A stretch of 64,000 nucleotides of DNA, from IMG/VR virus record IMGVR_UViG_3300045971_000344, positions 186,001-250,000 of that record. One strand, given 5' to 3'. Each line of letters begins with the position of its first letter. The first letter of the stretch is position 1. This document shows positions 22,942-38,809 of this stretch, one piece after another. The translations under genes were made by a program, and so were the position numbers. The notes below the pieces were generated by a model. That model was not told the origin of the DNA. It saw nothing but the letters and a program-made list of their open reading frames with translations, and did not search any database.

Positions 22942-22963
22942 TATGTTTTCTCCTCTTTATTAT

Positions 22964-23344
22964 TTATTGGATAATGAAATTTTGACCTATAATTGCTTGT
23001 CCGATAGGAGGAAGCCCTTGAGGTAAGCCATCAATAAAAGGAACAGTATCAAAAACGGCTGAGGTTACTTGGAATGTAACAGCCGTAGCAAAGTCCTTCC
23101 TACGAATAATTGTCTGAGTATCAGTTACGCGCTTGGTCTCATAGTCAGAACCGGATCCGACTACACCGTTAGTTATCTCAACACTATCAGCGGTAACTGT
23201 AGGAATCTGGGTCAGTCCAATTGGGTCATGCGTGATACAAAGAAACTCCGCATCAGTTGTTAAAGGATCAACACTAGCAATCTGGGCCATACTTGGGTTT
23301 ATCTGTGTTCCGTAAAAAACTTGACTACTTTTCCTATACGTCAT
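22964..23344 (-). CDS. Hypothetical virion protein
   Basis: 126 aa with AAGGAG RBS, inside the fibre cluster. Confidence 0.6.
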   Translation of the reverse strand: MTYRKSSQVFYGTQINPSMAQIASVDPLTTDAEFLCITHDPIGLTQIPTVTADSVEITNGVVGSGSDYETKRVTDTQTIIRRKDFATAVTFQVTSAVFDTVPFIDGLPQGLPPIGQAIIGQNFIIQ

Positions 23345-23357
23345 GTGTTCTACTCCT

Positions 23358-24353
23358 TTATGCTAAGATTAACTTCAATTTCTGGATAAATTTATCGGCC
23401 TTCATTTGATTACAGCATTCTGCGGTTCCTAGAAAACACTGTTCATAATTCCAATAATGGGAAGCCCAGCGAGACTCACAATAAAGGCACTCAAGCTCTG
23501 GTTTAACCACATAGGTAACTCCAGTTGTCCTTATGGGTACCCTATGAATTGCATCTACGGTAGTATACCCACACACTATTGGAACGTCTGTACAGCCAGC
23601 CAAATGTATGGGCCCACTATCAAGTCCTATTACAGCCCTGCTCTTGGACATTATAGTAGCCAGTTCAGAAATGGTCGTTTTGTTTCTCAAGTCTAACCCG
23701 TGTGCTGAAATGTCTTCAGGAAGGTCAGATTTTGGAATCAAATGAGTATCCATATTCATGTCGGTCTTACCAACAAATACTGGCAAGAGATCTTGCTTTC
23801 TGATCCAGGCGGCGATCTCCAGCATATAATCTGCTTTCCACGCTCTAGTCTCATCTCTATAAGTAGAAACCAAAATAACTGCACTAGAGAATGGTCCAAA
23901 TTTATCTATATTAACCTTCTTAAGTGGAACATAATTAAGCTCGTCTAGGGTCAATATTCTATCAGCGAGCTTTATGGATGCAAACTCTGAAAGGTGATAC
24001 ATACGTGGTACATTTCTTAAAATCTTGCCTTGGTTCTTTGCATTTAAGGCCGAAATAGAAAAATCAGCAGGTATCCCCCAATCATTATCCTTATCCTCAT
24101 AATTTCGGAAATTTGAATCCGGAATAAAATGAAAAAACGGTCTAAACATTTGTTTAGCCACAACCATATAGGAACAAGGATCAGTATAATAATTTTCAAT
24201 CATGTACTTTACAACTGGAACCGCCGCTATAGCGTCGCCCATAGCTAAAGTATTCAACATGAAACACGTTGGATTTAATACCCACCTTGTAATATTCTTA
24301 TTAGGAACATTCCATTTATCTATCTTTTGCTTGTGTTCTTCACTAATTCCCAT
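23358..24353 (-). CDS. GT9-family (heptosyltransferase-like) glycosyltransferase
   Basis: Motifs AMGDAI, DLRNKTTISEL and IGLDSGPIHLA, plus a C-terminal C..C...C....C cluster. Confidence 0.85.
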   Translation of the reverse strand: MGISEEHKQKIDKWNVPNKNITRWVLNPTCFMLNTLAMGDAIAAVPVVKYMIENYYTDPCSYMVVAKQMFRPFFHFIPDSNFRNYEDKDNDWGIPADFSISALNAKNQGKILRNVPRMYHLSEFASIKLADRILTLDELNYVPLKKVNIDKFGPFSSAVILVSTYRDETRAWKADYMLEIAAWIRKQDLLPVFVGKTDMNMDTHLIPKSDLPEDISAHGLDLRNKTTISELATIMSKSRAVIGLDSGPIHLAGCTDVPIVCGYTTVDAIHRVPIRTTGVTYVVKPELECLYCESRWASHYWNYEQCFLGTAECCNQMKADKFIQKLKLILA

Positions 24354-24382
24354 CTCGTATCCGCCTCTCTCTCATTTTATAG

Positions 24383-24417
24383 AAAAATAGGAGGGTAGAT
24401 TTGCCTACCCTCCTATT
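24383..24417 (-). terminator. Intrinsic terminator after the EITAR fibre gene
   Basis: Perfect 13-bp stem AATAGGAGGGTAG/CTACCCTCCTATT running into a T run on the minus strand. Confidence 0.7.
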
Positions 24418-24435
24418 ATCCTACTTAGGTAAATC

Positions 24436-27400
24436 TTAAACGTATGCGGCGATGAAGTCGATAATAAGCAGATCGTTTACACCAGGAGCAGTAACAAACG
24501 AAACAGTGTTTCCGCTAACAGTGTAATCGTTAGCAGGGTGCTGACGCAGACCATTGAGGTAAACCTGCTCTGTACCAGCATCAAAAGATACAGAAGTTGT
24601 GAAGTTCATATTGAAACCATCAAGGGCACCACTGAAGATATCATTGATAATTACAGATGCGCGGAATACTGCGGTCTCATCAATTACTTTAATTGCGGCC
24701 GCGCGGGCAGTTACTTCGGTCAACAGATTCGCTGTAAGAGTAGCATCAGCGTTTGTGCGGGCGGTGATCTCAGTGTTCAGGTCAGCAGTCAGAGTACTTG
24801 CGGCACTCAGGCGGGCAGTTACTTCGGTCAGCAGATCTGCAGTCAGAGTAGCATCACCAGCTACGCGAGCAGTAGTCTCGATATCCAGGTTAGCCTGGAG
24901 TGTGCTGTCTGCGCCTGTGCGGGCAGTGATTTCAGTGTTCAGGTTACTCTGAAGAGTATTATCAGCGTTTACTCGTGCGGTGGTCTCGATATCCAGGTTA
25001 GACTGAAGGGTGCTGTCTGCGGACTTACGGGCAGTTACTTCTGTCAACAGATCGGCTGTAAGGGTGTTATCAGCTGCAGTCCGTGCAGTGATTTCAGTAT
25101 TGATAGCTGCAGTACGGTCCAGAACCTCAGTAGCTACTGCATTTGTCCTTGCAGTTACTTCGGTCAGCAGATCTGCAGTCAGGGTAGCATCAGCGTTTGT
25201 GCGACTCGTTATTTCATTGTTAATTGCCGTTGTGAGGTCACCATTAGCATTACTTACTGCATTGATACGGGCAGTGATTTCAATATCCAGGTTGGACTGA
25301 AGAGTGTTGTCAGCGTTTGTCCGTGCAGTTATTTCAGTGTTGATCGCCGCGGTCCGAGCAGTAATATCAGCATTCAACTGACCCAGAGTTACAGGTGCGT
25401 CAGCGTCAACTGCATCCTGAACGTGGACGGAACCATCTGCGTTGATCTTAAGGGCATTTAAACCTGCCTCAGTTTTAACCTGTACGATTTCTGCGGCTGC
25501 AAAACCCGTTACAGGCTGAACGCTTAAGCCTTTTGCTGCACCAGCGGGGCTAAGGTCAAGGTGTTCAGAGTTTGTAACAACAGAGTCGATCTGAGTAGTC
25601 GAACCACTTACGTAGAGCTCACCAGTGATAGTCATGTTACCACTTACATTAACAGGACCGGTCATTGAAGCCGAACCGGTTTCAGAGTCAACCTGGAAGT
25701 AAATAGTATCTTCGGTGTCGTCTGTAATACGGAAGTCTTTACCGGTTGTGAGCTTGATGTTTGCAACTCCACCACCAACAGCTGTCTGATTGTAAATATC
25801 TTGCAGGGTAACTGACTGACGGGCCGTTACTTCGGTTAACAAATTCGCAGTAAGCGTATCATCAGCAGACTTACGGGCCGTTGCTTCTACGTCCAGGTTG
25901 GATTGAAGAGTGTTGTCAGCGTTTGTGCGACTCGTGATTTCACTGTTAATAGCTGCCGTACGGTCCTGAACCTCAGTAGCTACTGCATTTGTCCTTGCAG
26001 TGATTTCAGTGTTCAGGTTAGCTGTAAGGGTGGCATCGCCAGCGATACGGCTCGTAGTTTCTACGTCCAGGTTGGATTGAAGAATGTTGTCAGCGTTTGT
26101 GCGGGCGGTGATTTCAGTATTTAATGCTGCACTACCATCAGTACCTGCACTCAGGCGGGCGGTGATTTCAGTCTGCAAATCAGCAGCCAGAGTAGCATCG
26201 CCAGAGATACGGGCAGTTACTTCGGTCAGCAAATCAGCTGTAAGGGTGTTATCAGCTGCAGTCCTTGCAGTGAGTTCAGTGTTGATAGCCGCAGTACGGT
26301 CCAGAACCTCAGTAGCTACTGCATTTGTCCTTGCAGTTATTTCAGTCTGCAGATCAGCCGTAAGGGTGTTGTCTGCAGTGGTCCGTGCAGTTACTTCTGT
26401 TAACAGATTAGCAGTAACTGTGTTAATGTTACCCTGAAGGGTAGCATCTGCATTTGTACGACCAGTGATCTCAGTCTGCAGATCAGCTGTAAGAGTAGCA
26501 TCAGCGTTTGTACGGGCGGTTACTTCGTTTGCGATAGCTGTAGTAATGTCGCCAGTAATTGTGTTAGACAGGTTATTGATCGCAGTGGTCCGTGCGGTTA
26601 CTTCTGTCAACAGATCAGCAGCCAGAGTAGCATCACCAGCAATGCGTGCGGTTACTTCTGTCAACAGATCAGCTGTAAGGGTAGCATCACCAGCGATACG
26701 TGCAGTTACTTCGGTCAGCAAGTCAGCTGTAAGAGTGTCATCAGCGGCCTTACGGGCGGTTACTTCAATGTCCAGATTGGACTGAAGGGTGCTGTCAGCG
26801 TTTGTACGACTCGTAATTTCAGTATTCAGACCCGAAGTCAGTATAGCATCGCCGGAGATACGGGCAGTTACTTCTGTCAACAGATCAGCCGTAAGGGTGT
26901 TGTCTGCAGTTGTTCTAGCCGTTGCTTCAATGTCCAGGTTAGATTGAAGAGTGTTATCGGCGTTTGTCCGACTCGTGATCTCACTGTTCAGGTTACTCTG
27001 AAGAGTGTTGTCACCAGCAACTCGGCTCGTGATTTCACTGTTAATGGCGGCTGTAAGGTCACCATTGGCATTACTTACAGCGTTCATACGGGCAGTGATC
27101 TCGATATCCAGGTTGGACTGAAGGGTGTTGTCAGCGTTTGCCCGAGCAGTTGCCTCAGTAGAAATTGCGGTAGTAAGGGTAGTTGCAATGCTAGCATCGT
27201 TAGCAATAGCATCAGCAATTTCTTTCAAGGTATCAAGAGCGGCTGGTGCGCTGTTAATAACACCAGCAATAGCTGTACTGATGTTACCATCAGTTTCTAC
27301 TTTGGTGTAAACATCGGCCTTACGATAGGTGTCACCAGCCAGAGTATCAAGGTTACCCTGGATAGTTAGGTCTGCGGCTTTACGGGCCGTGATTTCACTG

Positions 27401-28092
27401 TTAAGATCAGCAGTCAGTGTGTTGTCTGCAGACAGACGGGCAGTGATTTCAGTGTTCAATGCTGCACTGTTATCAGTACCTGCGGATAAACGTGCTGTGA
27501 TTTCAAGGTTCAGGTTTGCCTGAAGAGTATCATCAGCTGCCTTACGGGCTGTGATCTCAGTGTCCAAATTGCTAGTAAGCTGTGAATCACCAGACTGACG
27601 TGCAGTTACTTCGGTCAACAGGTCTGCAGTAAGAGTGGCGTCACCAGCTACTCGGGCAGTGATTTCAGTGTTCAGGTTACTCTGAAGAGTGTTATCACCA
27701 GCTACGCGAGCCGTTGTTTCTACATCTAAGTTACTCTGAAGAGTAGCATCACCAGCGATCCTGGCAGTTACTTCAGTCAGCAGATCTGCAGTCAGGGTAG
27801 CATCTGCATTTGTCCTTGCGGTTGCTTCTGTGTTAAGATTACTCTGAAGAGTGTTGTCTGCGGTGGTCCGGGCAGTTAGTTCTGTCAACAAGTCAGCAGT
27901 AAGGGTGTTCGATGCGGAAGTACGCGCAGTGATTTCAGTATTAATATTAGCTTGGAGATTGTCCAGGCTAGTACCAAGTCCTTCGATCTTGCTCTGCTTA
28001 ATACCGGCAGCGTTAATGATCTGACTATCGGTAATACCTTCCAGTGTAGTTGCGACAGCAATTTGACTGGCTTTAATCTGTGTAATAGACAT
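24436..28092 (-). CDS. Long coiled-coil repeat fibre protein (EITAR/EVTAR repeats)
   Basis: 1218 aa with dozens of mostly 18-aa L.TE[IV]TAR..AD.TL repeats, the fibre motif AP.ALDTLKEIA, and a C-terminal VYLNGLRQ...DY domain. Confidence 0.85.
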   Translation of the reverse strand: MSITQIKASQIAVATTLEGITDSQIINAAGIKQSKIEGLGTSLDNLQANINTEITARTSASNTLTADLLTELTARTTADNTLQSNLNTEATARTNADATLTADLLTEVTARIAGDATLQSNLDVETTARVAGDNTLQSNLNTEITARVAGDATLTADLLTEVTARQSGDSQLTSNLDTEITARKAADDTLQANLNLEITARLSAGTDNSAALNTEITARLSADNTLTADLNSEITARKAADLTIQGNLDTLAGDTYRKADVYTKVETDGNISTAIAGVINSAPAALDTLKEIADAIANDASIATTLTTAISTEATARANADNTLQSNLDIEITARMNAVSNANGDLTAAINSEITSRVAGDNTLQSNLNSEITSRTNADNTLQSNLDIEATARTTADNTLTADLLTEVTARISGDAILTSGLNTEITSRTNADSTLQSNLDIEVTARKAADDTLTADLLTEVTARIAGDATLTADLLTEVTARIAGDATLAADLLTEVTARTTAINNLSNTITGDITTAIANEVTARTNADATLTADLQTEITGRTNADATLQGNINTVTANLLTEVTARTTADNTLTADLQTEITARTNAVATEVLDRTAAINTELTARTAADNTLTADLLTEVTARISGDATLAADLQTEITARLSAGTDGSAALNTEITARTNADNILQSNLDVETTSRIAGDATLTANLNTEITARTNAVATEVQDRTAAINSEITSRTNADNTLQSNLDVEATARKSADDTLTANLLTEVTARQSVTLQDIYNQTAVGGGVANIKLTTGKDFRITDDTEDTIYFQVDSETGSASMTGPVNVSGNMTITGELYVSGSTTQIDSVVTNSEHLDLSPAGAAKGLSVQPVTGFAAAEIVQVKTEAGLNALKINADGSVHVQDAVDADAPVTLGQLNADITARTAAINTEITARTNADNTLQSNLDIEITARINAVSNANGDLTTAINNEITSRTNADATLTADLLTEVTARTNAVATEVLDRTAAINTEITARTAADNTLTADLLTEVTARKSADSTLQSNLDIETTARVNADNTLQSNLNTEITARTGADSTLQANLDIETTARVAGDATLTADLLTEVTARLSAASTLTADLNTEITARTNADATLTANLLTEVTARAAAIKVIDETAVFRASVIINDIFSGALDGFNMNFTTSVSFDAGTEQVYLNGLRQHPANDYTVSGNTVSFVTAPGVNDLLIIDFIAAYV

Positions 28093-29757: not shown

Positions 29758-30702
29758 TTAAAATGCTCCGCCGTCTACGGTACCAACTGAAAGTACACCT
29801 GTTGTAAAGACCAAACCATCACCAGCGACTGTTGGGTCAAGTTGGAAGTCATTAACGCTTTTTGTTACACCGGTTGATGCTGTGTAGGTAACTATGGCCG
29901 ACATACGGGCTGTGATCTCAGTGTTAAGGGCAGCTTGAAGAGTACTATCAGCAGATGTCCGGGCAGTGATTTCAGTGTTCAAGTTAGAGGTTAAGGTACT
30001 GTCCGCACTTGTACGGGCCGTGATCTCAATGTCCAGGGCAGCTGAAGTAGCTTTGTCGCCTACAGATGTAAGAAGTGTACTAAGGGTACCTTCATCTGCC
30101 TGAAGAGCGGTAGCAAGTTCTTGGAGGGTATCAAGAGTAGCTGGGGCAGTACCAACCAGATCAGCAATAGCAGCCTTACGAGCAGTTACTTCAGTATCAA
30201 TTGCTGCTTGAACTGTTGAAACCGCGGATGTTCGGGCCGTGATCTCAATCAATAAATCAGAGGCTACTGTACTAACTGCAGAAGTCCGTGCAGTGATTTC
30301 AGTCAACAGGTCCGCTGCTACAGTACTAACTGCAGAAGTCCGGGCGGTGATTTCGGTATTAAGGGCCGTAACATCTGCTTTTCCATCCAGTGCTGATTGG
30401 AGCGCAGTACTATCTGAAGGTACACCAGTCAAGGACGCAAAACTCGCGGCCGCTGCTTCAGGTGCAAGAATAACCCAAGTAGTACCGTTATGACGCTTCA
30501 TTACGTTATTAGTTGTGTCTACCCACAAGCGGGTAGTATCGGAGGGGGCTGAGGTAGCAAAGTTTACATCTGTAACTTTAGCAACGCCTGTACCCGTACC
30601 GATATAAAGTTCATTAGTGTCGGTAGTTACCAACGGTTCACCGACAGTTGCAGTTGCAGGAAGATTGGCTTTCAAACCACGCTTTAGTAGAACTTGTGTC
30701 AT
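29758..30702 (-). CDS. Fibre protein with Mtd-N-like domain, EITAR repeats and C-terminal DGG motif
   Basis: VLLKRG...GEPLVTTDTNELYIG, EITAR repeats and APATLDTLQELA; ends VDGGAF. Confidence 0.75.
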   Translation of the reverse strand: MTQVLLKRGLKANLPATATVGEPLVTTDTNELYIGTGTGVAKVTDVNFATSAPSDTTRLWVDTTNNVMKRHNGTTWVILAPEAAAASFASLTGVPSDSTALQSALDGKADVTALNTEITARTSAVSTVAADLLTEITARTSAVSTVASDLLIEITARTSAVSTVQAAIDTEVTARKAAIADLVGTAPATLDTLQELATALQADEGTLSTLLTSVGDKATSAALDIEITARTSADSTLTSNLNTEITARTSADSTLQAALNTEITARMSAIVTYTASTGVTKSVNDFQLDPTVAGDGLVFTTGVLSVGTVDGGAF

Positions 30703-30738
30703 GTTTATTTCTCCTTTTTTGTCTTTTTATTATTCGTA

Positions 30739-30754
30739 AGTAAATTACGAATTT
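30739..30754 (-). promoter_or_regulatory. Putative phage late promoter (identical to 11278-11293)
   Basis: AAATTCGTAATTTACT, about 40 nt upstream of the 30702 start. Confidence 0.5.
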
Positions 30755-30767
30755 CAAATATTGATTG

Positions 30768-31346
30768 TTAAAATGTTCCGGAGTCAACTACTTGTGACCA
30801 AGACAAACTACGATCTTTGTTTCCAAATAAAACTGAGCTATCTTCAGATGGTACCGGCAATTCAGGTTGTAGAGCGATTGGGTTATTTGTAGTTAGTGAA
30901 GGATTACTTATACTTAAGTATTTACTGTGCCTAGTTGATTCTACGTTCCTAATTGCGGCAATAAAAAATTCATCTACGCCATTAACAAACATGGAAGTTA
31001 TTGCCATTGTTCCTAAGTCATCTGTTGCACCAATTACTGCCTGTGAACTTTGCAAGGGGTAATCATAAGTTGTCCAGCCGGAGGGCTGTGCTTCTAGCAT
31101 ATCCCATTTTAAGATCACCCTTAAGAAAGCTCCATTGGTAGCCACATCAATAGTTGTTATCTTAAATCTAAGAGCTCCTAATCCTAATAAAGCACAGTCA
31201 GAATAAACTACGTCTCCTAGTTTAGCGTCCATTGCACTGAATACACCAGTGTTATCAATTACAGTTCCCTCTAAAACCCACTCATCTGTAGTTCCACCCA
31301 CAGGGGTGACAGATGAAATATCCAGCCTACCATTTAGCACATTCAT
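30768..31346 (-). CDS. Virion protein; paralog of 28434-29099
   Basis: GTVIDNTGVF...GDVVYS; ends VDSGTF. Confidence 0.7.
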   Translation of the reverse strand: MNVLNGRLDISSVTPVGGTTDEWVLEGTVIDNTGVFSAMDAKLGDVVYSDCALLGLGALRFKITTIDVATNGAFLRVILKWDMLEAQPSGWTTYDYPLQSSQAVIGATDDLGTMAITSMFVNGVDEFFIAAIRNVESTRHSKYLSISNPSLTTNNPIALQPELPVPSEDSSVLFGNKDRSLSWSQVVDSGTF

Positions 31347-31356
31347 CTAACACCCC

Positions 31357-33720
31357 TTAAAACACGAGATTTATCCAACACGGCTGACTGTTCTGCGTAA
31401 ACCCTGTTAGCTTCAGCGTGTGGGAATTTGTTCCAAAATTTCCGAAAACTGTTGACTTATTAGCATACCCTGCTCCATCATCTGAGAAAACTTGAAACTG
31501 TGGACAGTACAGGGTGCTATACGCAGTATACAGAGAGGAAGATACTTCGGCTAAGTCAATGGTTACTCCAGATGTTGCAGTCGACATGTCCGTTGCAGTC
31601 ATGTGGATACTCATACTATGAAGTATCGTATTAGCAGCAACTGAAATCTTAACATCCGTTGTCTGACTACTTCCATCTTTTAGGTATGCTATAGCCGTAG
31701 AATATTCTGTAGGTGCGTCTAAAGATGCTACTGTTGCATAACTATTTGAGGAAGATAAAGGGTTCATTGTATTAGCTGATACACCACAGCGTATTCTAGC
31801 TGTCGTGTAGCCCCCAGTTGAACCTGACCCAGGCAAACCTTGAGGACCTTGTGGTCCTGCTACTGTTGAGGCCGTTCCTTGTGTTCCTTGTGAACCAGTC
31901 AGACCTTGGGGTCCCTGTGAACCTGTGTTACCTTGTGAACCTTGAGGTCCCTGACTTCCAGTCAAACCTTGAGGACCAGTACTACCTTGATTACCGGTTA
32001 CACCGATATTACCCTGACTGCCTTGACTACCGGTCAACCCCTGGTAACCTTGAGTGCCCTGACTACCAGTATTACCTTGATAACCTTGACTACCTTGTGC
32101 TCCAGTAGTTCCCTGTGCTCCTGTTAAACCTTGATAACCTTGAGGGCCTTGACTACCAGTTTGTCCTTGACTACCAGTGTTGCCTTGACTGCCAGTCAAA
32201 CCTTGAGTTCCTTGAGGACCCTGAATACCTTGAGCTCCACTTAAATCGGTAACGTAAGAATAAGCGTTGGATGCCCAAATATATAGTTTAGAATTATCTG
32301 GATCATTAACGTCATTAGTATTAATGACAGCAAATTCGCCGTTACTAATCCCCGTAGGACTAGTGTCCGCCAATAACTGCGCTACAGAAGTATAAACTTT
32401 CGAGACAGTAAAACCTTGTCCTGCAACGCCTTGACTGCCCTGAGGTCCTTGTGCGCCTTGGGATCCAGAAGAACCTTGTGTACCTTGTGTACCTTGAGAA
32501 CCAGTCTGGCCTTGTGATCCAGTTAGTCCTTGAGAACCTTGTGCTCCGACCAGGCCTTGACTCCCAGTTAAACCTTGTGTTCCTTGACTGCCTTGTGTTC
32601 CCTGACTGCCTTGTGTTCCTTCATTTCCTTGTGGTCCAGTTAACCCCTGTTGACCTTGACCTCCAGTGTTGCCTTGATAACCTTGAGGGCCCTGACTTCC
32701 AGTCAAACCTTGGGTTCCAGTTAATCCCTGAGGACCTTGACTTCCAGTATTACCTTGAGCTCCTTGACTACCGGTAAGACCTTGTGCACCTACCTGACCT
32801 TGAGGTCCTTGACTTCCGGTGTTACCTTGTACTCCCTGTGCTCCTGTTAGGCCCTGAGGACCTTGCACTCCAGTATTACCTTGAGTTCCAGTATTTCCCT
32901 GCGATCCTTGACTACCAGTTTGTCCTTGTACTCCCTGTGCTCCTGTTAGGCCTTGAGGACCTTGGACATTAGACGGAGCACCAATTTGTCCTTGGTAACC
33001 TTGGTAGCCCTGATTACCTTGAGTACCAACCGCACCTTGGACACCTTGTGTTCCCTGAGCTCCAGTTATTCCTTGTACGCCTTGAGTGCCCTGAGGTCCT
33101 TGTGCACCGACCGTTCCTTGTACCCCATCTGTTCCTCGGGCAATAAAAAGTTCCCAGTAAACACCGCTAACAGGAGTTTCATTGGTATTGGTAGTCAAAC
33201 AAACCCACGCCTCACCGTTATAGTTAACTATATCGGCTGGTGCATAAGTTGTAATTGATGCCCAATTACCTTTGTAAGATCCAGTTAAGCCAATTGAACC
33301 TTGAATACCTTGAGTTCCTTGTTGACCTTGGATACCCTGAGGTCCTTGATATCCCCTAGGTCCTTGTGCACCTTGAGGACCTGACCCTCCGGATCCACCT
33401 GTGCCTAACTGCTGACCGTTCCACGTTGGGTTGCCCACACCGTCCACGCCCAGCATTTCAAGCGCAGTTCCATTAGTATGAGCGTGCATGGATACAAGTT
33501 TCCAGTTTGCATTGTTAGCATACGCTGCCTGTGTTTCAGTTCCTGTAAACTCAAACTTGTAGTAAGTATTAGTCGAGCGAACAAAAACAATCATCCCTTT
33601 ATAGCGATAACCCGCAGGAATGGCATCCCTCTCAGCAACGGTATTAACGGATTCTCGACTATCCAGTGCCTTGTTGACCACATCAACAAAAATTTGTCCG
33701 CTTATAGGGTTTCCTTTCAT
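31357..33720 (-). CDS. Collagen-like (Gly-X-Gln) fibre protein
   Basis: 787 aa. N-terminal LDSR...RYKGMIVFV domain, about 150 GxQ-type triplets, and a C-terminal domain resembling that of 29113-29697. Confidence 0.85.
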   Translation of the reverse strand: MKGNPISGQIFVDVVNKALDSRESVNTVAERDAIPAGYRYKGMIVFVRSTNTYYKFEFTGTETQAAYANNANWKLVSMHAHTNGTALEMLGVDGVGNPTWNGQQLGTGGSGGSGPQGAQGPRGYQGPQGIQGQQGTQGIQGSIGLTGSYKGNWASITTYAPADIVNYNGEAWVCLTTNTNETPVSGVYWELFIARGTDGVQGTVGAQGPQGTQGVQGITGAQGTQGVQGAVGTQGNQGYQGYQGQIGAPSNVQGPQGLTGAQGVQGQTGSQGSQGNTGTQGNTGVQGPQGLTGAQGVQGNTGSQGPQGQVGAQGLTGSQGAQGNTGSQGPQGLTGTQGLTGSQGPQGYQGNTGGQGQQGLTGPQGNEGTQGSQGTQGSQGTQGLTGSQGLVGAQGSQGLTGSQGQTGSQGTQGTQGSSGSQGAQGPQGSQGVAGQGFTVSKVYTSVAQLLADTSPTGISNGEFAVINTNDVNDPDNSKLYIWASNAYSYVTDLSGAQGIQGPQGTQGLTGSQGNTGSQGQTGSQGPQGYQGLTGAQGTTGAQGSQGYQGNTGSQGTQGYQGLTGSQGSQGNIGVTGNQGSTGPQGLTGSQGPQGSQGNTGSQGPQGLTGSQGTQGTASTVAGPQGPQGLPGSGSTGGYTTARIRCGVSANTMNPLSSSNSYATVASLDAPTEYSTAIAYLKDGSSQTTDVKISVAANTILHSMSIHMTATDMSTATSGVTIDLAEVSSSLYTAYSTLYCPQFQVFSDDGAGYANKSTVFGNFGTNSHTLKLTGFTQNSQPCWINLVF

Positions 33721-33778
33721 TCGTACCCCCTAACGATAAAGTTACCTTGTCCCATAAAGGTCCTCCAATAGTTATTGT

Positions 33779-34366
33779 TTAAATAATGTAGCGTATTGTT
33801 TTACCACTTAAAGACAGGCAAGGATCTGCTGTAAAGTACACATAAAAGTCAACACCATCATAAGTAACTTCTCTAGGAAGGACTTCGTAAGATGCAAGAA
33901 TAGAAGCATAGCTAAAATTAGGATCCTGGACGTCAACAATAGGCCCATAGCTCTTAGGATAAGCAAAGGTCCTATAAGTTACATTAGACGTATAGATAAC
34001 ATCTTTAGGTCCACCTTGCCATTGCATGGTTGTCAAACCCGCAAAGAATCCTGGAGGGTCAAGTATTGGATCATTAGTAAGTACGTCCCCAAAATAGACG
34101 TTGGTTGCAACATTATTTGTGAATCTAAAAATTACATCCAGTGCTTCGGACACAGTCCTCACGTCTACTTGCTCATTGAAACGATTAGAGAATGCCGATC
34201 TAACATAGGGCATTTCAGAAGCGGAAACTGGACGTCCGCCGGGTGTTACACCATCACCTACCCAAAGTTGTAATACATCTGTACACCATACGAGCTCACC
34301 ATTAGCAAAGACCACCCCAACTCGCTCAGAGTTTGTTCCTCTTCTGACCTGAATACAATTTGACAT
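33779..34366 (-). CDS. Mtd-N-like domain virion protein
   Basis: IQVRRGT...GELVWCTDVLQLWVGDG.T.GG. Confidence 0.7.
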   Translation of the reverse strand: MSNCIQVRRGTNSERVGVVFANGELVWCTDVLQLWVGDGVTPGGRPVSASEMPYVRSAFSNRFNEQVDVRTVSEALDVIFRFTNNVATNVYFGDVLTNDPILDPPGFFAGLTTMQWQGGPKDVIYTSNVTYRTFAYPKSYGPIVDVQDPNFSYASILASYEVLPREVTYDGVDFYVYFTADPCLSLSGKTIRYII

Positions 34367-34385: not shown

Positions 34386-34619
34386 TTATTGTATTGTTCC
34401 ACCATCGTACTTAACACTGTCAACAGGATACACATCCTGAATTAAGCCCCCATCTATGTGCTCCATTAGATGGGTGAAGCGATCCCTACAGGTTCCACCA
34501 TCTATTAAGGCATGTAGGTTAAACAGATTCCTAGGTATAGTGTCTGCGGCAGTATATTCAGACAGGGCAATAACATTACCTTGTCCATCATATACCAGTT
34601 TAACCGGATATATGTCCAT
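34386..34619 (-). CDS. Small virion adaptor with three DGG motifs
   Basis: Start reassigned to ATG 34619 (AAAGGGG RBS). Contains LIDGG, HIDGG and KYDGG. Confidence 0.6.
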   Translation of the reverse strand: MDIYPVKLVYDGQGNVIALSEYTAADTIPRNLFNLHALIDGGTCRDRFTHLMEHIDGGLIQDVYPVDSVKYDGGTIQ

Positions 34620-34719
34620 TATGGATACCCCTTTATGTTTATATACATATAAATTATGTATTGTTTGTTCTATATTGATTATGAAATACGTAGCAAAATT
34701 AAAGAATCTTAATTTTCGG

Positions 34720-35300
34720 GGCGCCGCGCTAAGTGTTGCATCCCGCACGCTGTGCTAGCACAGCGTGCTTTCAATAAGCATCTAGATCCGGTTCTGCTAG
34801 CGATACTCAACAAAGTGAAGTATATAGTGCTTCTGAGCTAGCTCAGAAGCTAAAGGTAAGCGTGGTTAGATTTGGAAAATGCTAAGAAAGGAAGGATAAA
34901 GGGAAGTGATAAGCGAAGTAAGTACAGCAATAAGTAAAGTACCGCCGAAGGCGGATTGAAAATCCCAAAAAAAAAAAAAAAGAAAAGCTTTCCAGATTTT
35001 AGGTACAGTGAGGGTTTTATGGAAAGGGCCTAGTGAACCTAGTGAGGTTAGAGCTATCCATTACCGCCCTACCACCGCACCTTTCACACTGTCCTCATGC
35101 TCTTTCAATCTTTTCCCTTTTGTACTGTTCCTTGTACCCTAACTCCCAGGTTATCGATCTTACGGCAGACTACGTCTGCCATGTCTCGAGCTAAGCTCTC
35201 AACATTTGAGAAACTTCGTTTCTCTAGCATTGTTTATCATTGTGAGACAATGCGCGGTCGCAAGAAATCCCGCGGAAACGGGATTTACTGATAAAATTAC
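34720..35300. other. Candidate replication origin / structured DNA control region
   Basis: Perfect 24-bp and 22-bp palindromes centred on GCTAGC, C-GNA-G triloop hairpins on opposite strands, an A15 run and a purine-skew inversion, all close to the coding-strand switch. Confidence 0.5.
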
Positions 35301-35374
35301 AAATAAACATAAAAATTATAAAAAATACAAGTAATTTATGTATTTCTATAGGATTTTATGAGAATTCGGGTACA

Positions 35375-36870
35375 ATTATCAGGGTGTTGGGTTATGGTCT
35401 CCAGGTCGTGCATTACAACCACAAGCTTGAGTCATAAGCTAGTACCAAACACCTCCTACACGGACGGTTTACTTTCATCTGGAACAGCACCCTTATTTAG
35501 CGAGGAGTGCCACCCTCGACTACCTGACTCTTAGGTACTTGCCTAAGACTCTCGTATCCTCTTGTCGGATACGGCCACGCTGGTAGTTTTTGTTCTATAA
35601 ACAGTGTTGGAATATTATTCCGCAGTTCATAGAACGTTGCGTGGTCTACATGCCAGGACATGTTAGATTAGATACCTGGTCCCATTACCTAGCCTTCAAT
35701 TCATAAGTATTCGGTGCGCTTTCGGTACACACCTACATATATTGTTTTAAGCTCATCCTTATGAGCAAAATACTTATGTTCTTGAAGATCGCAACCCTTG
35801 GGGTTAGGGCTCCCCAGTCTGATGGATTCTTATCGTACTTGGTCTAAACAAGTTAGAACCCTGTTTCCGATAGTCATTTCGTGCCAATGTACTTTCGTAG
35901 CGCAGGTCTCGATGGACCCGACTATTGGCCTTATCGCTGTTACGGAAGTAACGATCTTCCTACAGCTCATTCCATTGTGCTGGTAATAGTGAGTAGGGTG
36001 AGTACCTTTATACTCTGATATTAGGCATTGTCCACATTTTGTGTGGTAATGGAAGACATTATCTGCATAAGCACATTGCGTAGCGGTAGTTAGCCCCTCG
36101 CTTCCGTGGTCTCCATGTGGGACTCAATCCCACCTCCCGAGTATGACAATTGCGGTCGCCTTTAATCTCGGACATAGCCTTTCTCTAGATCTTATCTGTG
36201 CGTATCTGCGATGTGCTTAAACGCCATTCATACCTTTATACTCAACCTAGGTCACTATGCCTATATCTGAAGAGTAAACCTGGAGAATTTTTACAGATTT
36301 TAAAAATCTACGTGCGTTTGATCCGCGTTCAGGTACAGTGTACCCTTCGACTTACGCCTCGTTTTCGTAGATCTTTCGGTGGATCCAAAGCCACCATAAC
36401 CCAAACAACTCAGAATGAAAACCTGATTACCGCAACATTACGCCCTTGGGTTAAAACCTCCGGGGCAGCCCGAGTATCGTAGTACCTACTATTTCCTGTA
36501 GGTTAGCATTGGGCTATGCCTTCTCGTGACTGTGTTGCCTTCATCCTCGGATAATCAGTGATCCTGATTTGCACTATTAGACTCGGATATATAACGCATC
36601 ATATCTACTTAGATTTGGTTAAACCGTCTTTAGGATAGACGATAAGACCGATTGAAGTTTACGAAACTTATCACATAACGGACAGGTTCTTTAAAGGAGA
36701 ATAGTCAGAAAAACCTTGTGGGGTTTGTAGGGGCTCGCGCATCCTACTTCCTCTGTGAGGCATTCGTAAAGTTCCCGCTCAATGCCCGCGGTACTAATGC
36801 TCTTGGTACAGCGTACTCATAACTGGTTACAACAAGACAGTTGTCTCCACTTATCAGGACGATGTACTTC
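35375..36870 (-). ncRNA. Candidate very large (~1.5 kb) structured non-coding RNA of unknown class
   Basis: No credible long ORF. More than 25 hairpins seen by eye. G-U pairs and GNRA loops favour the minus strand. A 12-bp perfect long-range helix joins 36393-36404 and 35387-35398. A CGTAATTTG motif lies upstream. Confidence 0.7.
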
Positions 36871-36901
36871 TCTTATTTACATTATTCACTCGTTGTATAA
36901 A

Positions 36902-36910
36902 CAAATTACG
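36902..36910 (-). promoter_or_regulatory. Putative late-type promoter for the large ncRNA (CGTAATTTG)
   Basis: Matches the RTAATTT motif seen upstream of virion operons. Confidence 0.4.
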
Positions 36911-36951
36911 TAGTTCAGCAATGACGTTAAAAAATACGTCTAGTGTGTACC

Positions 36952-36994
36952 TAGTACAACCCAGTAACGCTTATGACTTTACTGGGTTGTACTA
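36952..36994. repeat. Perfect 16-bp inverted repeat downstream of the RuvC-like gene
   Basis: TAGTACAACCCAGTAA-N11-TTACTGGGTTGTACTA. Confidence 0.85.
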
Positions 36995-37016
36995 CATTAA
37001 GTAACTATAATCTTAA

Positions 37017-37652
37017 TTATTTTTTAATGATACAGGTTTTAATGCGAGGTTTGGATATTCTTTTTGCTTTCTTAGCAGCCTTTGCTTCTTCGTCTACTCT
37101 AAAGCCTATTTCTTTCAAACCAGCTATTATACGTCCTACGTTCCTATCGCTAAGCGTGCTATAGGGTTTTACACCTAAATGAGAGTATAACCCATACAGG
37201 GCGATAAAGGTGGAGTCTACTAGGTGAGGTGGACAGGGCTTTACTTCTGCATAGATTTCTGATAGGTCGTAATAGCGTTTTATCTGAGATTTCCAAGTAA
37301 CAGCGGGAATAACAGTACAGACAGTTGACTTTAATTGTAGAGCAGTTACCGCAAGCATACAAGTAATCGCTTCTCCTAACTGGACCAGTCCACCCCTCGG
37401 CATGAATCTCTCGGCTATCCAGATATCCGGGTAGCCATGTTCAGTTATAAGGGCCTTTACACTTCGTCTATATTTAGTCAAGACCTTTCTAAAGTTGGTC
37501 TTTATATCCGTTGGAACAATGGGATTAGCTACCATCCAGGACTTTAACGAGACTATCCTAAAGGTATTATCTTTAGTAAGTTGTACGGTTAATAGTGTAC
37601 GCCCATAGTTTACCGTTGCAGGGTCATCTCCAAGAATAACATATTTTTTCAT
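37017..37652 (-). CDS. RuvC-like (RNase H fold) Holliday junction resolvase
   Basis: Motifs ILGDDPATVNYG, IAERF, PAVTWK and HLVDS, plus a basic C-terminal tail. Confidence 0.7.
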   Translation of the reverse strand: MKKYVILGDDPATVNYGRTLLTVQLTKDNTFRIVSLKSWMVANPIVPTDIKTNFRKVLTKYRRSVKALITEHGYPDIWIAERFMPRGGLVQLGEAITCMLAVTALQLKSTVCTVIPAVTWKSQIKRYYDLSEIYAEVKPCPPHLVDSTFIALYGLYSHLGVKPYSTLSDRNVGRIIAGLKEIGFRVDEEAKAAKKAKRISKPRIKTCIIKK

Positions 37653-37741
37653 AGCCCACACTCACTCTCAAAAGAAAAATTACATAATTTATTATTAAAT
37701 ATACAATCATAATCAAATTACAAACAAAGTGGGGGGCCTAT

Positions 37742-38809
37742 ATGGTCCAACGAATATCACATAAAAACCCAATTAACGCTAAAAACTTCACAGCAAAGTT
37801 GGCAGAACAGCGTAGAATTGAGATACAAAAGGCGCGTCAAAATTTCCAACAAAACTCTTTCTTGGTTGACAGCCCAGTAATTATATATTACTCTCAGATC
37901 AGAAATGGCTATACCTGTACGTGCCACGCTTATGAAAAGCCAGTAGAGGCGGAGAACGTACTAACTGTGGAGCCCACACTGGTTAATCATACTAATAAGG
38001 TTACAGAGATTTCGTACTCTACGCTGTCCAAGTCTCCGATGTTTGGATCATCTCTCCCTGTAGAGTCCAATATAGAAGACCTTTTATTGGATGATACCGA
38101 GACTGCTGAATCAAGTTCTACCCACCCATTATTTGGGACGCTCTTCAATAAAGGTTCTGATTGTGGGATTTGTATGAGGACAGGATTTAGCCCCTTATTT
38201 AGTCCCGTGGGTCGCCAGTTCTATGCTCTTACTACACATAATGTGTCTAACCTGGACGGGTATTATGTGGATACAACAGCAACCCCTCATTTATTTAAGC
38301 ACATACCTGAGGGACGTTCTTTATTTACATTTAAGGTACCCAAGTATTTCAAGACCTGTTCTTACAGGATTTTTAATAACGTACAGCCCTTGGAAGAAAA
38401 TCTCTATGTGGGGGCCGTTGCGCTAAATAAAGACCTGCTGAATTTAGCACGTGGGCAGGAATTAGTTGTGGAAATCCGTAACAAGGACTTTACTCATGTC
38501 TTTATTGAGTTCGATCTAGGTGTAGAGACTCACGCCAATTTTCCTCAGTTTTCTGTCTCAAAGGATTACACTTCGTTTTTCAATCTACAGTCAGTGTCAA
38601 TTGAGCTCCCTCCTTCAATGGGGAACTGTCAGGTGAATGATATTGTGTATGCTCCACAATGGAGTCGTTCTTGGCTAGTGTTTGATGTTCAGCCAAAATG
38701 GGAGGGGCCGAATCAGACAGTATTACTGGGTACAACCGTACAAGGTAGATTAATCCAGCCCCTAGAAACATTTTCAATATTAAGATCATTAAGACCAATA
38801 GAAAGGTAG
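37742..38809 (+). CDS. Putative virion structural (neck/head-closure-like) protein with a zinc-binding motif
   Basis: CTC...CGICMRTGF motif; 355 aa. Function inferred. Confidence 0.5.
   Translation: MVQRISHKNPINAKNFTAKLAEQRRIEIQKARQNFQQNSFLVDSPVIIYYSQIRNGYTCTCHAYEKPVEAENVLTVEPTLVNHTNKVTEISYSTLSKSPMFGSSLPVESNIEDLLLDDTETAESSSTHPLFGTLFNKGSDCGICMRTGFSPLFSPVGRQFYALTTHNVSNLDGYYVDTTATPHLFKHIPEGRSLFTFKVPKYFKTCSYRIFNNVQPLEENLYVGAVALNKDLLNLARGQELVVEIRNKDFTHVFIEFDLGVETHANFPQFSVSKDYTSFFNLQSVSIELPPSMGNCQVNDIVYAPQWSRSWLVFDVQPKWEGPNQTVLLGTTVQGRLIQPLETFSILRSLRPIER

What the first reader, a model, noticed from the sequence alone, without database searches (positions are those of the whole stretch)
34720..35300. 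Symmetric origin-like element: GCTAGC-centred palindromes, opposed GNA-triloop hairpins and skew inversion
Seen in sequence: perfect palindromes GCACGCTGTGCTAGCACAGCGTGC (34745-34768) and GCTTCTGAGCTAGCTCAGAAGC (34829-34850) share a GCTAGC centre. A CCGCC-GAA-GGCGG hairpin lies on the plus strand (34942-34954). GGCAGAC-GTA-GTCTGCC (35180-35164) and GAGAAAC-GAA-GTTTCTC (35224-35208) lie on the minus strand. There is an A15 run (34967-34981) and a CCTAGTGA direct repeat near 35029-35046. The plus strand is purine-rich at about 34850-34990 and pyrimidine-rich at about 35060-35150, so each strand is purine-rich when read toward the centre. The element lies close to where the coding strand flips. 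Established knowledge: C-GNA-G triloops are exceptionally stable ssDNA hairpins, related triloop hairpins serve as N4 virion RNAP promoters, and T4 origins use promoter-driven R-loops. Inference: a bidirectional origin or primer-RNA/R-loop site, possibly driven by the minus-strand GTAATTT motif at 35300. A packaging or resolution site is an alternative.
Basis: partly seen in the sequence, partly recalled or inferred. Interest (0 to 1): 0.66.

Follow-up and report, generated by a model that had tools for sequence, protein, structure and literature searches.

The report
Hairpin-rich non-coding element in jumbo phage
A 600-base stretch of unusual DNA hairpins, palindromes and a unique A15 run sits in the only large gene-free gap of a 295-kb phage genome and keeps its layout in related phages; it may be a replication start site or part of a non-coding RNA unit, and sequence alone cannot say which.

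Summary
The two palindromes are the longest perfect ones in the 294,944-bp genome. A15 is its only A/T run of 9 or more. Four of the genome's 45 GNA-triloop hairpins lie within 283 bp.

The element is the left 0.6 kb of the genome's one large gene-free gap (34623-37016). An EGFOA-class small-RNA match lies next to it at 35384-35488 on the minus strand.

Four related uncultured jumbo phages keep the same layout next to the same tail-fibre gene, with almost no sequence identity: AT-rich promoter, GC block, strong hairpins, purine-rich then pyrimidine-rich tract, C-GNA-G hairpins. Across five phages GNA triloops make up 24% of hairpins in the element against 2.2% genome-wide (P = 1e-8).

The skew argument fails. 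Skew follows gene orientation, and its inflection is 3.4-3.7 kb away, at the coding-strand flip.

The origin reading remains possible. DNA-type hairpins, the A15 run, a promoter-like motif and the strand arrangement all fit it, but nothing tests it directly. A minus-strand non-coding transcription unit is nearly as likely. N4-type promoters, a pac site, DnaA boxes and intrinsic terminators were tested and not supported.

The parts
34649..34657 (-). Promoter-like motif (ATAATTTAT on the minus strand), about 27 nt upstream of the first tail-fibre-block gene (34386-34622, minus). It marks the left boundary of the element.
   Evidence: The motif [AG]TAATTTAT is enriched upstream of genes. Most intergenic copies are co-oriented with a start codon 7-60 nt downstream.
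34695..34716 (.). AT-rich hairpin or palindrome (8-bp stem, 9% GC).
34717..34770 (.). GC-rich block (67% GC), which includes palindrome 1. The same GC block lies 60-150 nt from the gene start in relatives L001, L008 and L011.
34745..34768 (.). Perfect 24-nt palindrome centred on GCTAGC. It is the longest in the genome. As single-stranded DNA it gives a 10-bp stem with a CTAG loop at -12.4 kcal/mol.
   Evidence: Its first 9 nt recur in relative L011 as the 5' arm of a 6-bp hairpin with a GTTA loop.
34796..34801 (.). Third GCTAGC, 42 bp from the first and 41 bp from the next. That spacing is about four helical turns.
34829..34850 (.). Perfect 22-nt palindrome centred on GCTAGC. It is the second longest in the genome.
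34851..34941 (+). Purine-rich tract on the plus strand (75% purine). A minus-strand RNA across it would be pyrimidine-rich.
   Evidence: A purine-rich tract lies at about the same offset (200-400 nt from the gene start) in the window, L001 and L008, and nearer the gene (about 180-240 nt) in L067.
34942..34954 (+). Plus-strand hairpin with a 5-bp GC stem and a GAA triloop. It contains CCGAAGG.
34953..34965 (+). Second plus-strand GAA-triloop hairpin (5-bp AT-rich stem). It overlaps the previous hairpin by 2 nt.
34967..34981 (+). A15 run, the only A/T homopolymer of 9 or more in the whole genome. It lies near the centre of the element.
35029..35046 (+). Tandem direct repeat CCTAGTGA(A) x2. It resembles the hairpin-loop motif of L008 (AACGTAGTGAA) and that of L011 (GACCGAAGGGAA).
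35060..35150 (+). Pyrimidine-rich tract on the plus strand (26% purine), so purine-rich on the minus strand.
35164..35180 (-). Minus-strand hairpin with a 7-bp stem and a GTA triloop closed by C-G.
   Evidence: z = -4.5.
35208..35224 (-). Minus-strand hairpin with a 7-bp stem and a GAA triloop closed by C-G.
   Evidence: z = -4.1. Relatives L001 and L008 each carry two minus-strand C-G(A/T)A-G hairpins at a similar offset, with different stems.
35238..35252 (.). Hairpin with a 6-bp stem and a 3-nt loop.
35265..35286 (.). Hairpin with an 8-9-bp stem.
   Evidence: z = -5.2.
35292..35344 (-). AT-rich segment with promoter-like motifs. Minus-strand [AG]TAATTT copies lie at 35292-35300 and 35311-35319. 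A 20-nt direct repeat (85% identical) of the tail-fibre promoter region lies at 35325-35344. That repeat also reads as a full plus-strand match at 35331-35339.
   Evidence: (family D2). The orientation is ambiguous because the motif is nearly palindromic.
35384..35488 (-). EGFOA-class small-RNA match (context; outside the finding).
   Evidence: RF02955 scores 30.1 bits against a gathering score of 37.7. L001 has a syntenic hit. The 16-25-nt core is conserved in L001, L008, L070 and L067.

Best explanation
**What it is.** The element is a lineage-specific control site that works when one DNA strand is exposed. It is most likely a transcription-activated start zone for DNA replication, that is, an origin or priming site.

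**Proposed mechanism (inferred, not shown).**
- Transcription from the AT-rich promoter-like cluster at 35292-35344 (minus strand), and/or unwinding at the unique A15/T15 tract, exposes single strands.
- The C-GNA-G mini-hairpins then fold. These are exceptionally stable as DNA, and they sit on the plus strand in the left half and on the minus strand in the right half.
- The folded hairpins hold the region open or mark priming or helicase-loading sites on each strand. The phage's own DnaB-type helicase and Toprim primase would act there.
- The purine-rich RNA made across 35150-35060 would favour a persistent RNA-DNA hybrid.

**Shown here.**
- The features are statistically exceptional.
- The layout, though not the sequence, is conserved in four related phages.
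- GNA-triloop hairpins and the CG[AT]AG motif are specifically enriched.
- The promoter-like motif is enriched upstream of genes across the genome.

**Inferred only.** Any link to replication.
For: **Exceptional features.**
- The element holds the two longest palindromes in the genome, 3 of its 16 GCTAGC sites, and 4 of its 45 GNA hairpins within 283 bp.
- It holds the genome's only A/T run of 9 or more.
- It is the only large gene-free region of the genome. All six frames are full of stops, and no copy exists elsewhere.

**Conservation.**
- The gap has the same synteny in L001, L008 and a third contig.
- The compositional layout is the same by offset from the gene start.
- Two minus-strand C-GNA-G hairpins occur at similar offsets in three phages, with unrelated stems.

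**Specific enrichment.**
- GNA triloops are 11 of 46 hairpins in the element across five phages, against 45 of 2068 genome-wide. The odds ratio is 14 and P = 1e-8.
- CG[AT]AG occurs 28 times in 3.0 kb, against 2.4 per kb in the flanks (P = 3.5e-9). The strand order is +++|-- here and ++++|---- in L008.

**Published precedents.**
- GNA mini-hairpins are far more stable as DNA than as RNA.
- They occur at the phage G4 priming origin, in RSF1010 ssiA (CCGAAGG, the same heptamer as at 34944-34950), and in N4 promoters (PMC13037366).

**Other support.**
- The promoter-like motif is documented.
- The phage encodes DnaB, a Toprim primase and PolA.
Against: - There is no direct evidence of replication initiation.
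- The skew gives no support. Its inflection is at 38389-38689 and it follows gene orientation.
- The replication genes lie 65-80 kb away.
- There is no DnaA-box cluster.
- The only iteron-like repeats are a single 2 x 9-nt tandem.
- The symmetry is loose, and L001 has GNA motifs on the minus strand only.
- The purine and pyrimidine arms are not a real inverted repeat.
- The perfect palindromes and the GCTAGC centre are not conserved.
- Several observations fit a plain minus-strand RNA just as well:
  - the minus-type skew of the gap;
  - the orientation of the EGFOA match;
  - promoter motifs that are nearly all on the minus strand;
  - folding z-scores that are more negative on the minus strand in 4 of 4 loci.
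Confidence: 0.35

Rival explanations
1. The element is a purely RNA-level unit. It would be the 3' part of the phage's non-coding RNA locus, a minus-strand unit running from about 35300 to about 34745.

The RNA would start at the 35292-35344 promoter cluster and open with four or five stem-loops. It would continue through a purine-rich tract, U15 and a pyrimidine-rich tract that could load Rho. It would end at the two strong GC-rich hairpins, which are the palindromes.

Those hairpins would insulate the late tail-fibre promoter at 34649-34657 from read-through. On this reading no replication role exists.
For: - An EGFOA-class RNA lies on the same strand immediately upstream. This family is described as lying in unusually large gene-free intergenic regions (bioRxiv 10.64898/2026.07.01.735769).
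- Promoter-like motifs inside the gaps of four phages are nearly all on the minus strand. One copy lies at the right edge of the gap in the window, L001 and L008, just past the resolvase gene.
- The ORF-free gap has minus-block GC and AT skew.
- Folding z-scores are more negative on the minus strand in 4 of 4 loci.
- Every relative has one or two strong hairpins at the same offset, between the tract and the gene promoter.
- The hairpin at the convergent gene junction near 121.5 kb also lacks a clean U-tract.
Against: - It does not explain the 14-fold preference for GNA triloops. These are stable as DNA and much weaker as RNA.
- It does not explain why GNA loops sit on the plus strand in the left half.
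- The palindromes are perfect through their centres and are phased 41-42 bp apart.
- No U-tract follows either palindrome on either strand.
- The promoter sites at 35300 and 35319 match only the 7-mer core, inside a segment with 12% GC.
- The one full 9-mer match, at 35331, is on the plus strand.
- No RNA data exist for this sequence.
Confidence: 0.3
2. The element is a double-stranded DNA array of protein-binding sites. The three GCTAGC-centred sites share a CTG(N)GCTAGC half-site and are 41-42 bp apart. A dimeric phage protein would bind them to control the adjacent late tail-fibre promoter, or they would act as a centromere-like or recombination site.
For: - The two palindromes are perfect through their centres and share a centre. 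The three sites are phased by about four helical turns.
- They lie about 90-200 bp upstream of the promoter motif at 34649-34657.
- Three independent assemblies of a relative all break 47 nt upstream of the homologous gene. This suggests population-level variability at that point.
Against: - The closest relative with sequence here (L011) has a non-palindromic GTTA loop on the homologous hairpin and no GCTAGC array.
- Other relatives have different hairpins, which are mostly not perfect palindromes.
- This reading explains only the left 110 bp of the element.
Confidence: 0.15
3. The element is a packaging (pac), genome-end or resolution site, or an injection-stop signal.
For: - The region is non-coding and rich in palindromes.
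- A RuvC-like resolvase gene lies at 37017-37661.
- The element sits inside the structural-gene region.
Against: - The large terminase gene is at 260.5 kb of the genome and the portal gene at 267 kb. The terminase gene is 39 kb from the element.
- Contigs from two runs cross the region with no ends, joints or variants.
- The resolvase / 355-aa gene pair is also conserved in phage PaBG, without such a gap beside it.
Confidence: 0.07
4. The element is a rapidly evolving spacer with no specific function. Its features would be by-products of composition or of past rearrangements.
For: - There is almost no sequence conservation, even where the neighbouring protein is 73% identical.
Against: - The layout is conserved by offset in three or four phages.
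- A specific hairpin class and pentamer recur in five phages.
- The genome is 94% coding and holds no other gap of this size.
Confidence: 0.08

Closest known systems
RSF1010 oriV (iterons, GC-rich and AT-rich segments, ssiA/ssiB hairpins on opposite strands, RepB' primase)
   Same: - It combines a GC-rich block, an AT tract, short direct repeats and hairpin signals on opposite strands.
- The ssiA mini-hairpin heptamer CCGAAGG is identical to 34944-34950.
   Different: - No RepB'/RepC/RepA set was looked for or found.
- The only iteron-like repeat is a 2 x 9-nt tandem.
- The element is far longer (0.6 kb).
- It lies in a 295-kb lytic-type phage genome that carries DnaB, a Toprim primase and PolA.
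Phage G4/St-1/alpha3 complementary-strand origins and G4-type priming signals
   Same: Stable GC-closed mini-hairpins of the GCG(N)NAGC class mark where primase starts on single-stranded DNA.
   Different: Those templates are permanently single-stranded. Here the DNA is double-stranded and would first have to be opened. The hairpin number, spacing and flanks also differ.
T4 oriF/oriG, ColE1 and mitochondrial heavy-strand origins (promoter-driven R-loop primers)
   Same: A promoter-like motif is followed by a tract whose RNA would be purine-rich, and then by an easily melted A/T tract.
   Different: Neither the promoter class nor the transcript is demonstrated. No R-loop data exist.
Phage N4 virion-RNA-polymerase early promoters
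   Same: The hairpins have 5-7-bp stems and 3-nt GAA or GGA-type loops closed by C-G.
   Different: No N4-like giant polymerase is evident. The largest proteins are a 2035-aa helicase and tail or baseplate proteins. PF00940 gave no hit, although that search also stayed silent in all controls.
EGFOA gene-free regions (Rfam RF02955)
   Same: The element lies in a long ORF-free region, next to a sub-threshold EGFOA match that is syntenic in relatives.
   Different: Seventy-eight other EGFOA loci from metagenomes show no CG[AT]AG enrichment and no purine/pyrimidine pattern downstream. The hairpin element is therefore specific to this phage clade and is not a general EGFOA companion.

Membership tests
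Replication origin defined by compositional skew | The cumulative GC or purine skew extremum lies at the element, and the skew is independent of gene orientation. | tested here: not met
   The minima are at window 38389-38689, at the coding-strand flip. Contrary-oriented genes carry the opposite skew, and the ORF-free DNA to the right of the element keeps minus-block skew.
RSF1010-type oriV | Hairpin priming signals on opposite strands, next to GC-rich and AT-rich segments. | tested here: met
   Plus-strand GAA hairpins lie at 34942-34965 and minus-strand GTA/GAA hairpins at 35164-35224. The GC block is at 34717-34770 and A15 at 34967-34981.
RSF1010-type oriV | An array of three or more iterons, plus a cognate initiator, helicase and primase (RepC/RepA/RepB'). 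| tested here: inconclusive
   The only direct repeat is one 2 x 9-nt tandem. TRF found no intergenic iteron array among its 25 best-scoring hits. RepB'-type proteins were not searched for. DnaB and Toprim primase genes exist 65-80 kb away.
DnaA-dependent origin | A cluster of DnaA boxes. | tested here: not met
   With up to one mismatch allowed, no box lies in 34720-35300, and only one lies in the whole gap.
R-loop (T4 oriF/G, ColE1) origin | A promoter, with a persistent RNA-DNA hybrid at a downstream unwinding element. | not testable with these tools
   A promoter-like motif is present. No RNA runs hold this sequence.
N4-type hairpin promoter | A hairpin with a 5-7-bp stem and a 3-nt purine-centred loop. 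| tested here: met
N4-type hairpin promoter | The genome encodes an N4-like virion RNA polymerase. | tested here: not met
   PF00940 gave no hit, but the controls were also silent. The largest ORFs are a helicase and tail fibre, baseplate or tail proteins.
Intrinsic (Rho-independent) terminator | A GC-rich hairpin followed directly by a U-tract. | tested here: not met
   The scan found a single weak site, the minus-strand reading of the 34942-34954 hairpin, against 2.7 expected by chance. Neither palindrome is followed by a T-run on either strand.
pac / terminase recognition site | The site lies within or beside the terminase genes, and virion DNA ends map there. | tested here: not met
   The large terminase gene is at genome 260529-262652, which is 39 kb away. 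Contigs show no ends, but contigs cannot show termini.
EGFOA RNA (RF02955), for the neighbouring 35384-35488 | A score at or above the family gathering threshold. | tested here: inconclusive
   The score is 30.1 bits against 37.7. L001 has a syntenic hit of 29.4 bits, and the core is conserved in five loci.

The most novel reading that the evidence does not exclude
A clade of uncultured jumbo phages, distant kin of PaBG and Lu11, starts replication at a transcription-activated origin built from DNA mini-hairpins (C-GNA-G) on opposite strands around an A/T tract. This origin is physically coupled to an EGFOA-class structured RNA gene in the genome's single gene-free region. That would give the first mapped origin type for such phages and a biological context for the orphan EGFOA RNA.
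Probability: 0.2. Interest if true: 0.75.

Novelty: new variant of a known kind. Interest (0 to 1): 0.55.

Why it matters
- Replication origins of jumbo phages are essentially unmapped. A conserved layout that can be recognised from sequence would make them testable.
- The EGFOA RNA now has cryo-EM structures but no known organism, context or function. Here it sits at a fixed position between the resolvase gene and the tail-fibre genes, inside the only gene-free region of a complete 295-kb phage genome.
- The strong preference for DNA-type GNA triloops, conserved while the stems change, is a rare sequence-level sign that a double-stranded DNA virus uses folded single-stranded DNA.
- If instead the element is a non-coding RNA unit with terminators, it is ordinary regulatory DNA with an unusual hairpin style.

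Tried and rejected
**Searches that found nothing**
- Rfam at gathering thresholds over the whole window gave no hits, and no tRNAs were found.
- blastn of the gap against 50,697 phage records gave no match.
- The profile scan of IMG/VR returned only L001 again. The scan of the metagenome collection with the 355-aa protein profile found no relative.
- RF02956 turned out to be an unrelated family.
- A literature search on PaBG non-coding regions found nothing useful.
- The supplement of the paper that first described EGFOA is not held.

**Tests on the gap and its surroundings**
- The gap shows no protein-level conservation with the gaps of relatives by tblastx. The ORFs of 58-115 aa called there are unrelated in sequence.
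- No diversity-generating template repeat and no second copy of any gap segment exists in the genome.
- Reading the element as one large inverted repeat was rejected for the window. L008 does have a real 25-nt inverted repeat.
- The convergent gene junction at 121.5 kb has only one ordinary terminator-like hairpin and no GNA cluster.
- PaBG has no EGFOA match near its homologous gene pair.

**Searches for more EGFOA loci**
- An 18-nt pattern (15 specified bases) taken from the EGFOA core gave 49 IMG/VR hits. All were chance hits apart from L044, the L001 contig again.
- A two-block EGFOA pattern gave 78 distinct loci (11 IMG/VR stretches and at least 119 metagenome stretches). None belongs to this phage clade, and none shows the element's signature downstream.
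- Three contigs from gut metagenomes were left out of that analysis.

**Sequencing runs**
- Only two DNA runs hold the sequence, both kept as assembled contigs and both possibly its source.
- Laying them showed an unbroken contig and nothing else.

**Terminase search**
- Pfam terminase and polymerase-B models gave no hits.
- The terminase was found with PHROGs instead.
Full report
**Context**

The window is bases 186001-250000 of a single 294,944-bp virus record rated complete.
- The genome is about 94% coding.
- Genes run on the plus strand from about 224 kb, through the record ends, to 121 kb. They run on the minus strand from 121.5 to 223.7 kb.
- The finding lies at the left end of an ORF-free gap, window 34623-37016.
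- This is the only large gap in the genome. All other stretches without an ORF of 50 aa or more are at most 534 nt.
- All six frames of the gap carry 41-54 stops of all three kinds.
- To the left is a minus-strand block of baseplate and tail-fibre genes.
- To the right are a minus-strand RuvC-like resolvase gene (37017-37661), then the strand flip (37661/37742), then plus-strand genes that include a head-tail connector and a tail protein.
- The DnaB helicase, Toprim primase and PolA genes are at 6.3, 9.7 and 285 kb of the genome. The large terminase and portal genes are at 260.5 and 267 kb.
- Distant cultured relatives are PaBG, Lu11 and the Erwinia and Dickeya jumbo phages, at 25-28% identity for the 355-aa neighbour.

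Every feature is at the stated place. The features are not chance.
- The genome has six perfect palindromes of 18 nt or more. The two in the finding are the longest.
- Three of 16 GCTAGC sites lie here, at 42 and 41 bp spacing.
- Four of 45 GNA-triloop hairpins with stems of 5 bp or more, and two of five with 7-bp stems, lie within 283 bp.
- A15 is the only A/T run of 9 or more in the genome.
- The purine-rich and pyrimidine-rich tracts fall at the 99.6th and 0.4th percentiles.
- The individual hairpins fold well as DNA, with z from -2.9 to -5.6.

Two corrections apply.
- The two tracts are not a real inverted repeat.
- The order of parts is only loosely symmetric.

**Relatives**

The same synteny is found in several contigs: a 78-aa gene, then a gap, then the resolvase gene, then the divergent 355-aa gene.
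- L001 is an IMG/VR contig of 170 kb, with a gap of 1.9 kb.
- L008 is an ENA contig of 124 kb, with a gap of 3.05 kb.
- A 58-kb contig without retrievable DNA has a gap of 1.5 kb.
- L067 is more distant, with a gap of 1.4 kb.
- L011 and L015 cover the left part only.

Sequence identity in the gaps is almost nil.
- The only shared patch is a block of about 25 nt at 35392-35421.
- That patch is the conserved core of Rfam EGFOA. The window scores 30.1 bits and L001 29.4 bits, against a gathering score of 37.7.

The layout is nevertheless conserved by distance from the gene start.
- 0-60 nt: AT-rich, with the promoter-like motif.
- 60-150 nt: GC-rich block.
- About 120-230 nt: one or two strong hairpins.
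- 200-400 nt: purine-rich plus strand.
- 420-480 nt: pyrimidine-rich plus strand.
- 450-740 nt: two minus-strand C-G(A/T)A-G hairpins with unrelated stems.
- 620-860 nt: the EGFOA core.
- This layout holds in the window, L001 and L008. In the more distant L067 the purine-rich and pyrimidine-rich tracts lie closer to the gene.

Two signatures are specifically enriched across five phages.
- GNA triloops are 24% of hairpins in the element, against 2.2% in the genome. The odds ratio is 14 and P = 1e-8.
- CG[AT]AG occurs at 9.2 per kb, against 2.4 per kb in the flanks (P = 3.5e-9).
- Motif copies are on the plus strand in the left half and the minus strand in the right half, both here and in L008.
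- They are mostly plus in L011 (left half only) and in L067, and minus only in L001.
- L008 and L011 display a related 12-nt motif in hairpin loops. The window's CCTAGTGA repeat resembles it.

The palindromes themselves are not conserved.
- L011 keeps the first 9 nt of palindrome 1, but as a 6-bp hairpin with a non-palindromic GTTA loop.

**Skew**

- Cumulative GC, AT and purine skews reach their local minimum at 38389-38689, at the strand flip, and not at 35000.
- Genes oriented against their block carry the opposite skew. The ORF-free 35500-37016 has plus-strand GC skew of -0.068 and AT skew of -0.105, like the minus block.
- Skew therefore reports gene or transcript orientation here. It says nothing for or against an origin.
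- The short-range purine-to-pyrimidine switch inside the element has the opposite polarity to the global inflection.

**Transcription signals**

- The motif [AG]TAATTTAT is enriched upstream of genes, together with the ribosome-binding site.
- Most of its intergenic copies sit 7-60 nt before a co-oriented start codon.
- One copy drives the first tail-fibre-block gene (34649-34657, minus strand).
- Inside the gaps of four phages, the core motif is nearly always on the minus strand.
- One copy lies at the right edge of the gap in the window, L001 and L008. In L001 another copy lies directly before EGFOA.
- The AT-rich segment 35292-35344 holds two minus-strand core matches. It also holds a 20-nt repeat of the tail-fibre promoter, which reads as a full match on the plus strand.
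- RNA folding z-scores are more negative on the minus strand in all four loci.
- No RNA run holds the sequence. The two DNA runs are contigs that cross the region unbroken.

**Interpretation**

Two readings survive.

*(a) A replication start or priming zone that works through exposed single strands.*
- It accounts for the DNA-type GNA hairpins. Their RNA counterparts are much less stable. They occur at the G4 priming origin, in RSF1010 ssiA (with the same CCGAAGG heptamer), and in N4 promoters (PMC13037366).
- It also accounts for the strand arrangement, the unique A/T tract, the GC block, the promoter and the purine-rich transcript.
- I rate it at 0.35.

*(b) A minus-strand non-coding RNA unit ending in strong hairpins that shield the late promoter.*
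- It accounts for the orientation evidence and for the neighbouring EGFOA match.
- It does not account for the GNA preference, the plus-strand GNA loops or the perfect, phased palindromes.
- I rate it at 0.30.

The two readings are compatible if the transcript primes or activates replication.

Lesser rivals:
- A double-stranded DNA operator array at the GCTAGC sites (0.15).
- A packaging or end site (0.07; the terminase gene is 39 kb away and no ends are seen).
- Functionless spacer (0.08).

Readings tested and not supported:
- N4-type promoters are unlikely, because no N4-like polymerase is evident.
- DnaA boxes are absent.
- Intrinsic-terminator criteria are not met.

**Novelty**

- The element matches no curated RNA family and no sequence in the phage collection.
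- It is specific to this clade. Seventy-eight other EGFOA loci lack its signature.
- Its building blocks are known from origins and priming sites, so I rate it a new variant of a known kind.
- Its function is unproven.

Noticed in passing
window 35384-35488 (minus); L001 7241-7411; L008 about 7030-7265; L070 about 300-480; L067 about 5285: An EGFOA-class RNA (RF02955) gives sub-threshold matches with a conserved core of 16-25 nt. It sits at a syntenic position in a clade of uncultured jumbo phages. This orphan RNA family is otherwise known only from long gene-free regions of unclassified metagenomic DNA.
   Followed up: partly
window 35500-36900: About 1.4 kb of ORF-free DNA has no repeats, no Rfam match, no conservation with relatives and little local structure, with folding z-scores near 0 for 35750-36800. 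Its role is unknown. The corresponding stretch is 1.2-2.2 kb in relatives.
   Followed up: partly
window 36952-36994: A perfect 16-bp stem with an 11-nt loop lies 23 nt past the resolvase stop codon. A minus-strand GTAATTT motif follows at 36903-36909. Together they look like a terminator and promoter pair that opens the gap's transcription unit.
   Followed up: partly
genome-wide; for example window 34649, 37684, 46748, 55301: A candidate phage promoter motif, [AG]TAATTTAT(A), lies 7-60 nt upstream of many start codons. It is conserved before the homologous gene in relatives L001, L008 and L011.
   Followed up: partly
L012, L013, L014 (position 1): Three independent assemblies of one relative all begin exactly 47 nt upstream of the homologous 79-aa gene, at the edge of the element. 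This suggests strain-level variability or an assembly-breaking structure there.
   Followed up: no
window 35358-35534 (+); L001 7147-7377 (+); L008 about 7037-7240 (+): Short plus-strand ORFs of 58-76 aa run through the EGFOA core in the same frame in three phages. The window copy has a full promoter motif and an AGGA before its ATG. The peptides are unrelated outside the core, so the ORFs are probably spurious.
   Followed up: partly
window 29758-34366 and 17680-28092 (minus): The tail-fibre genes carry Mtd_N domains and collagen-like repeats. No reverse transcriptase gene and no template repeat was seen nearby.
   Followed up: partly
L071 8790-10266 (PaBG record 116153-117629): Cultured phage PaBG has an unannotated 1.48-kb stretch two genes downstream of its homologue of the 355-aa gene. 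No Rfam match was found there.
   Followed up: partly
genome 27083-29443 and 276672-282779: The phage encodes an SbcC-like subunit of a palindrome-specific nuclease and a 2035-aa helicase next to PolA.
   Followed up: no
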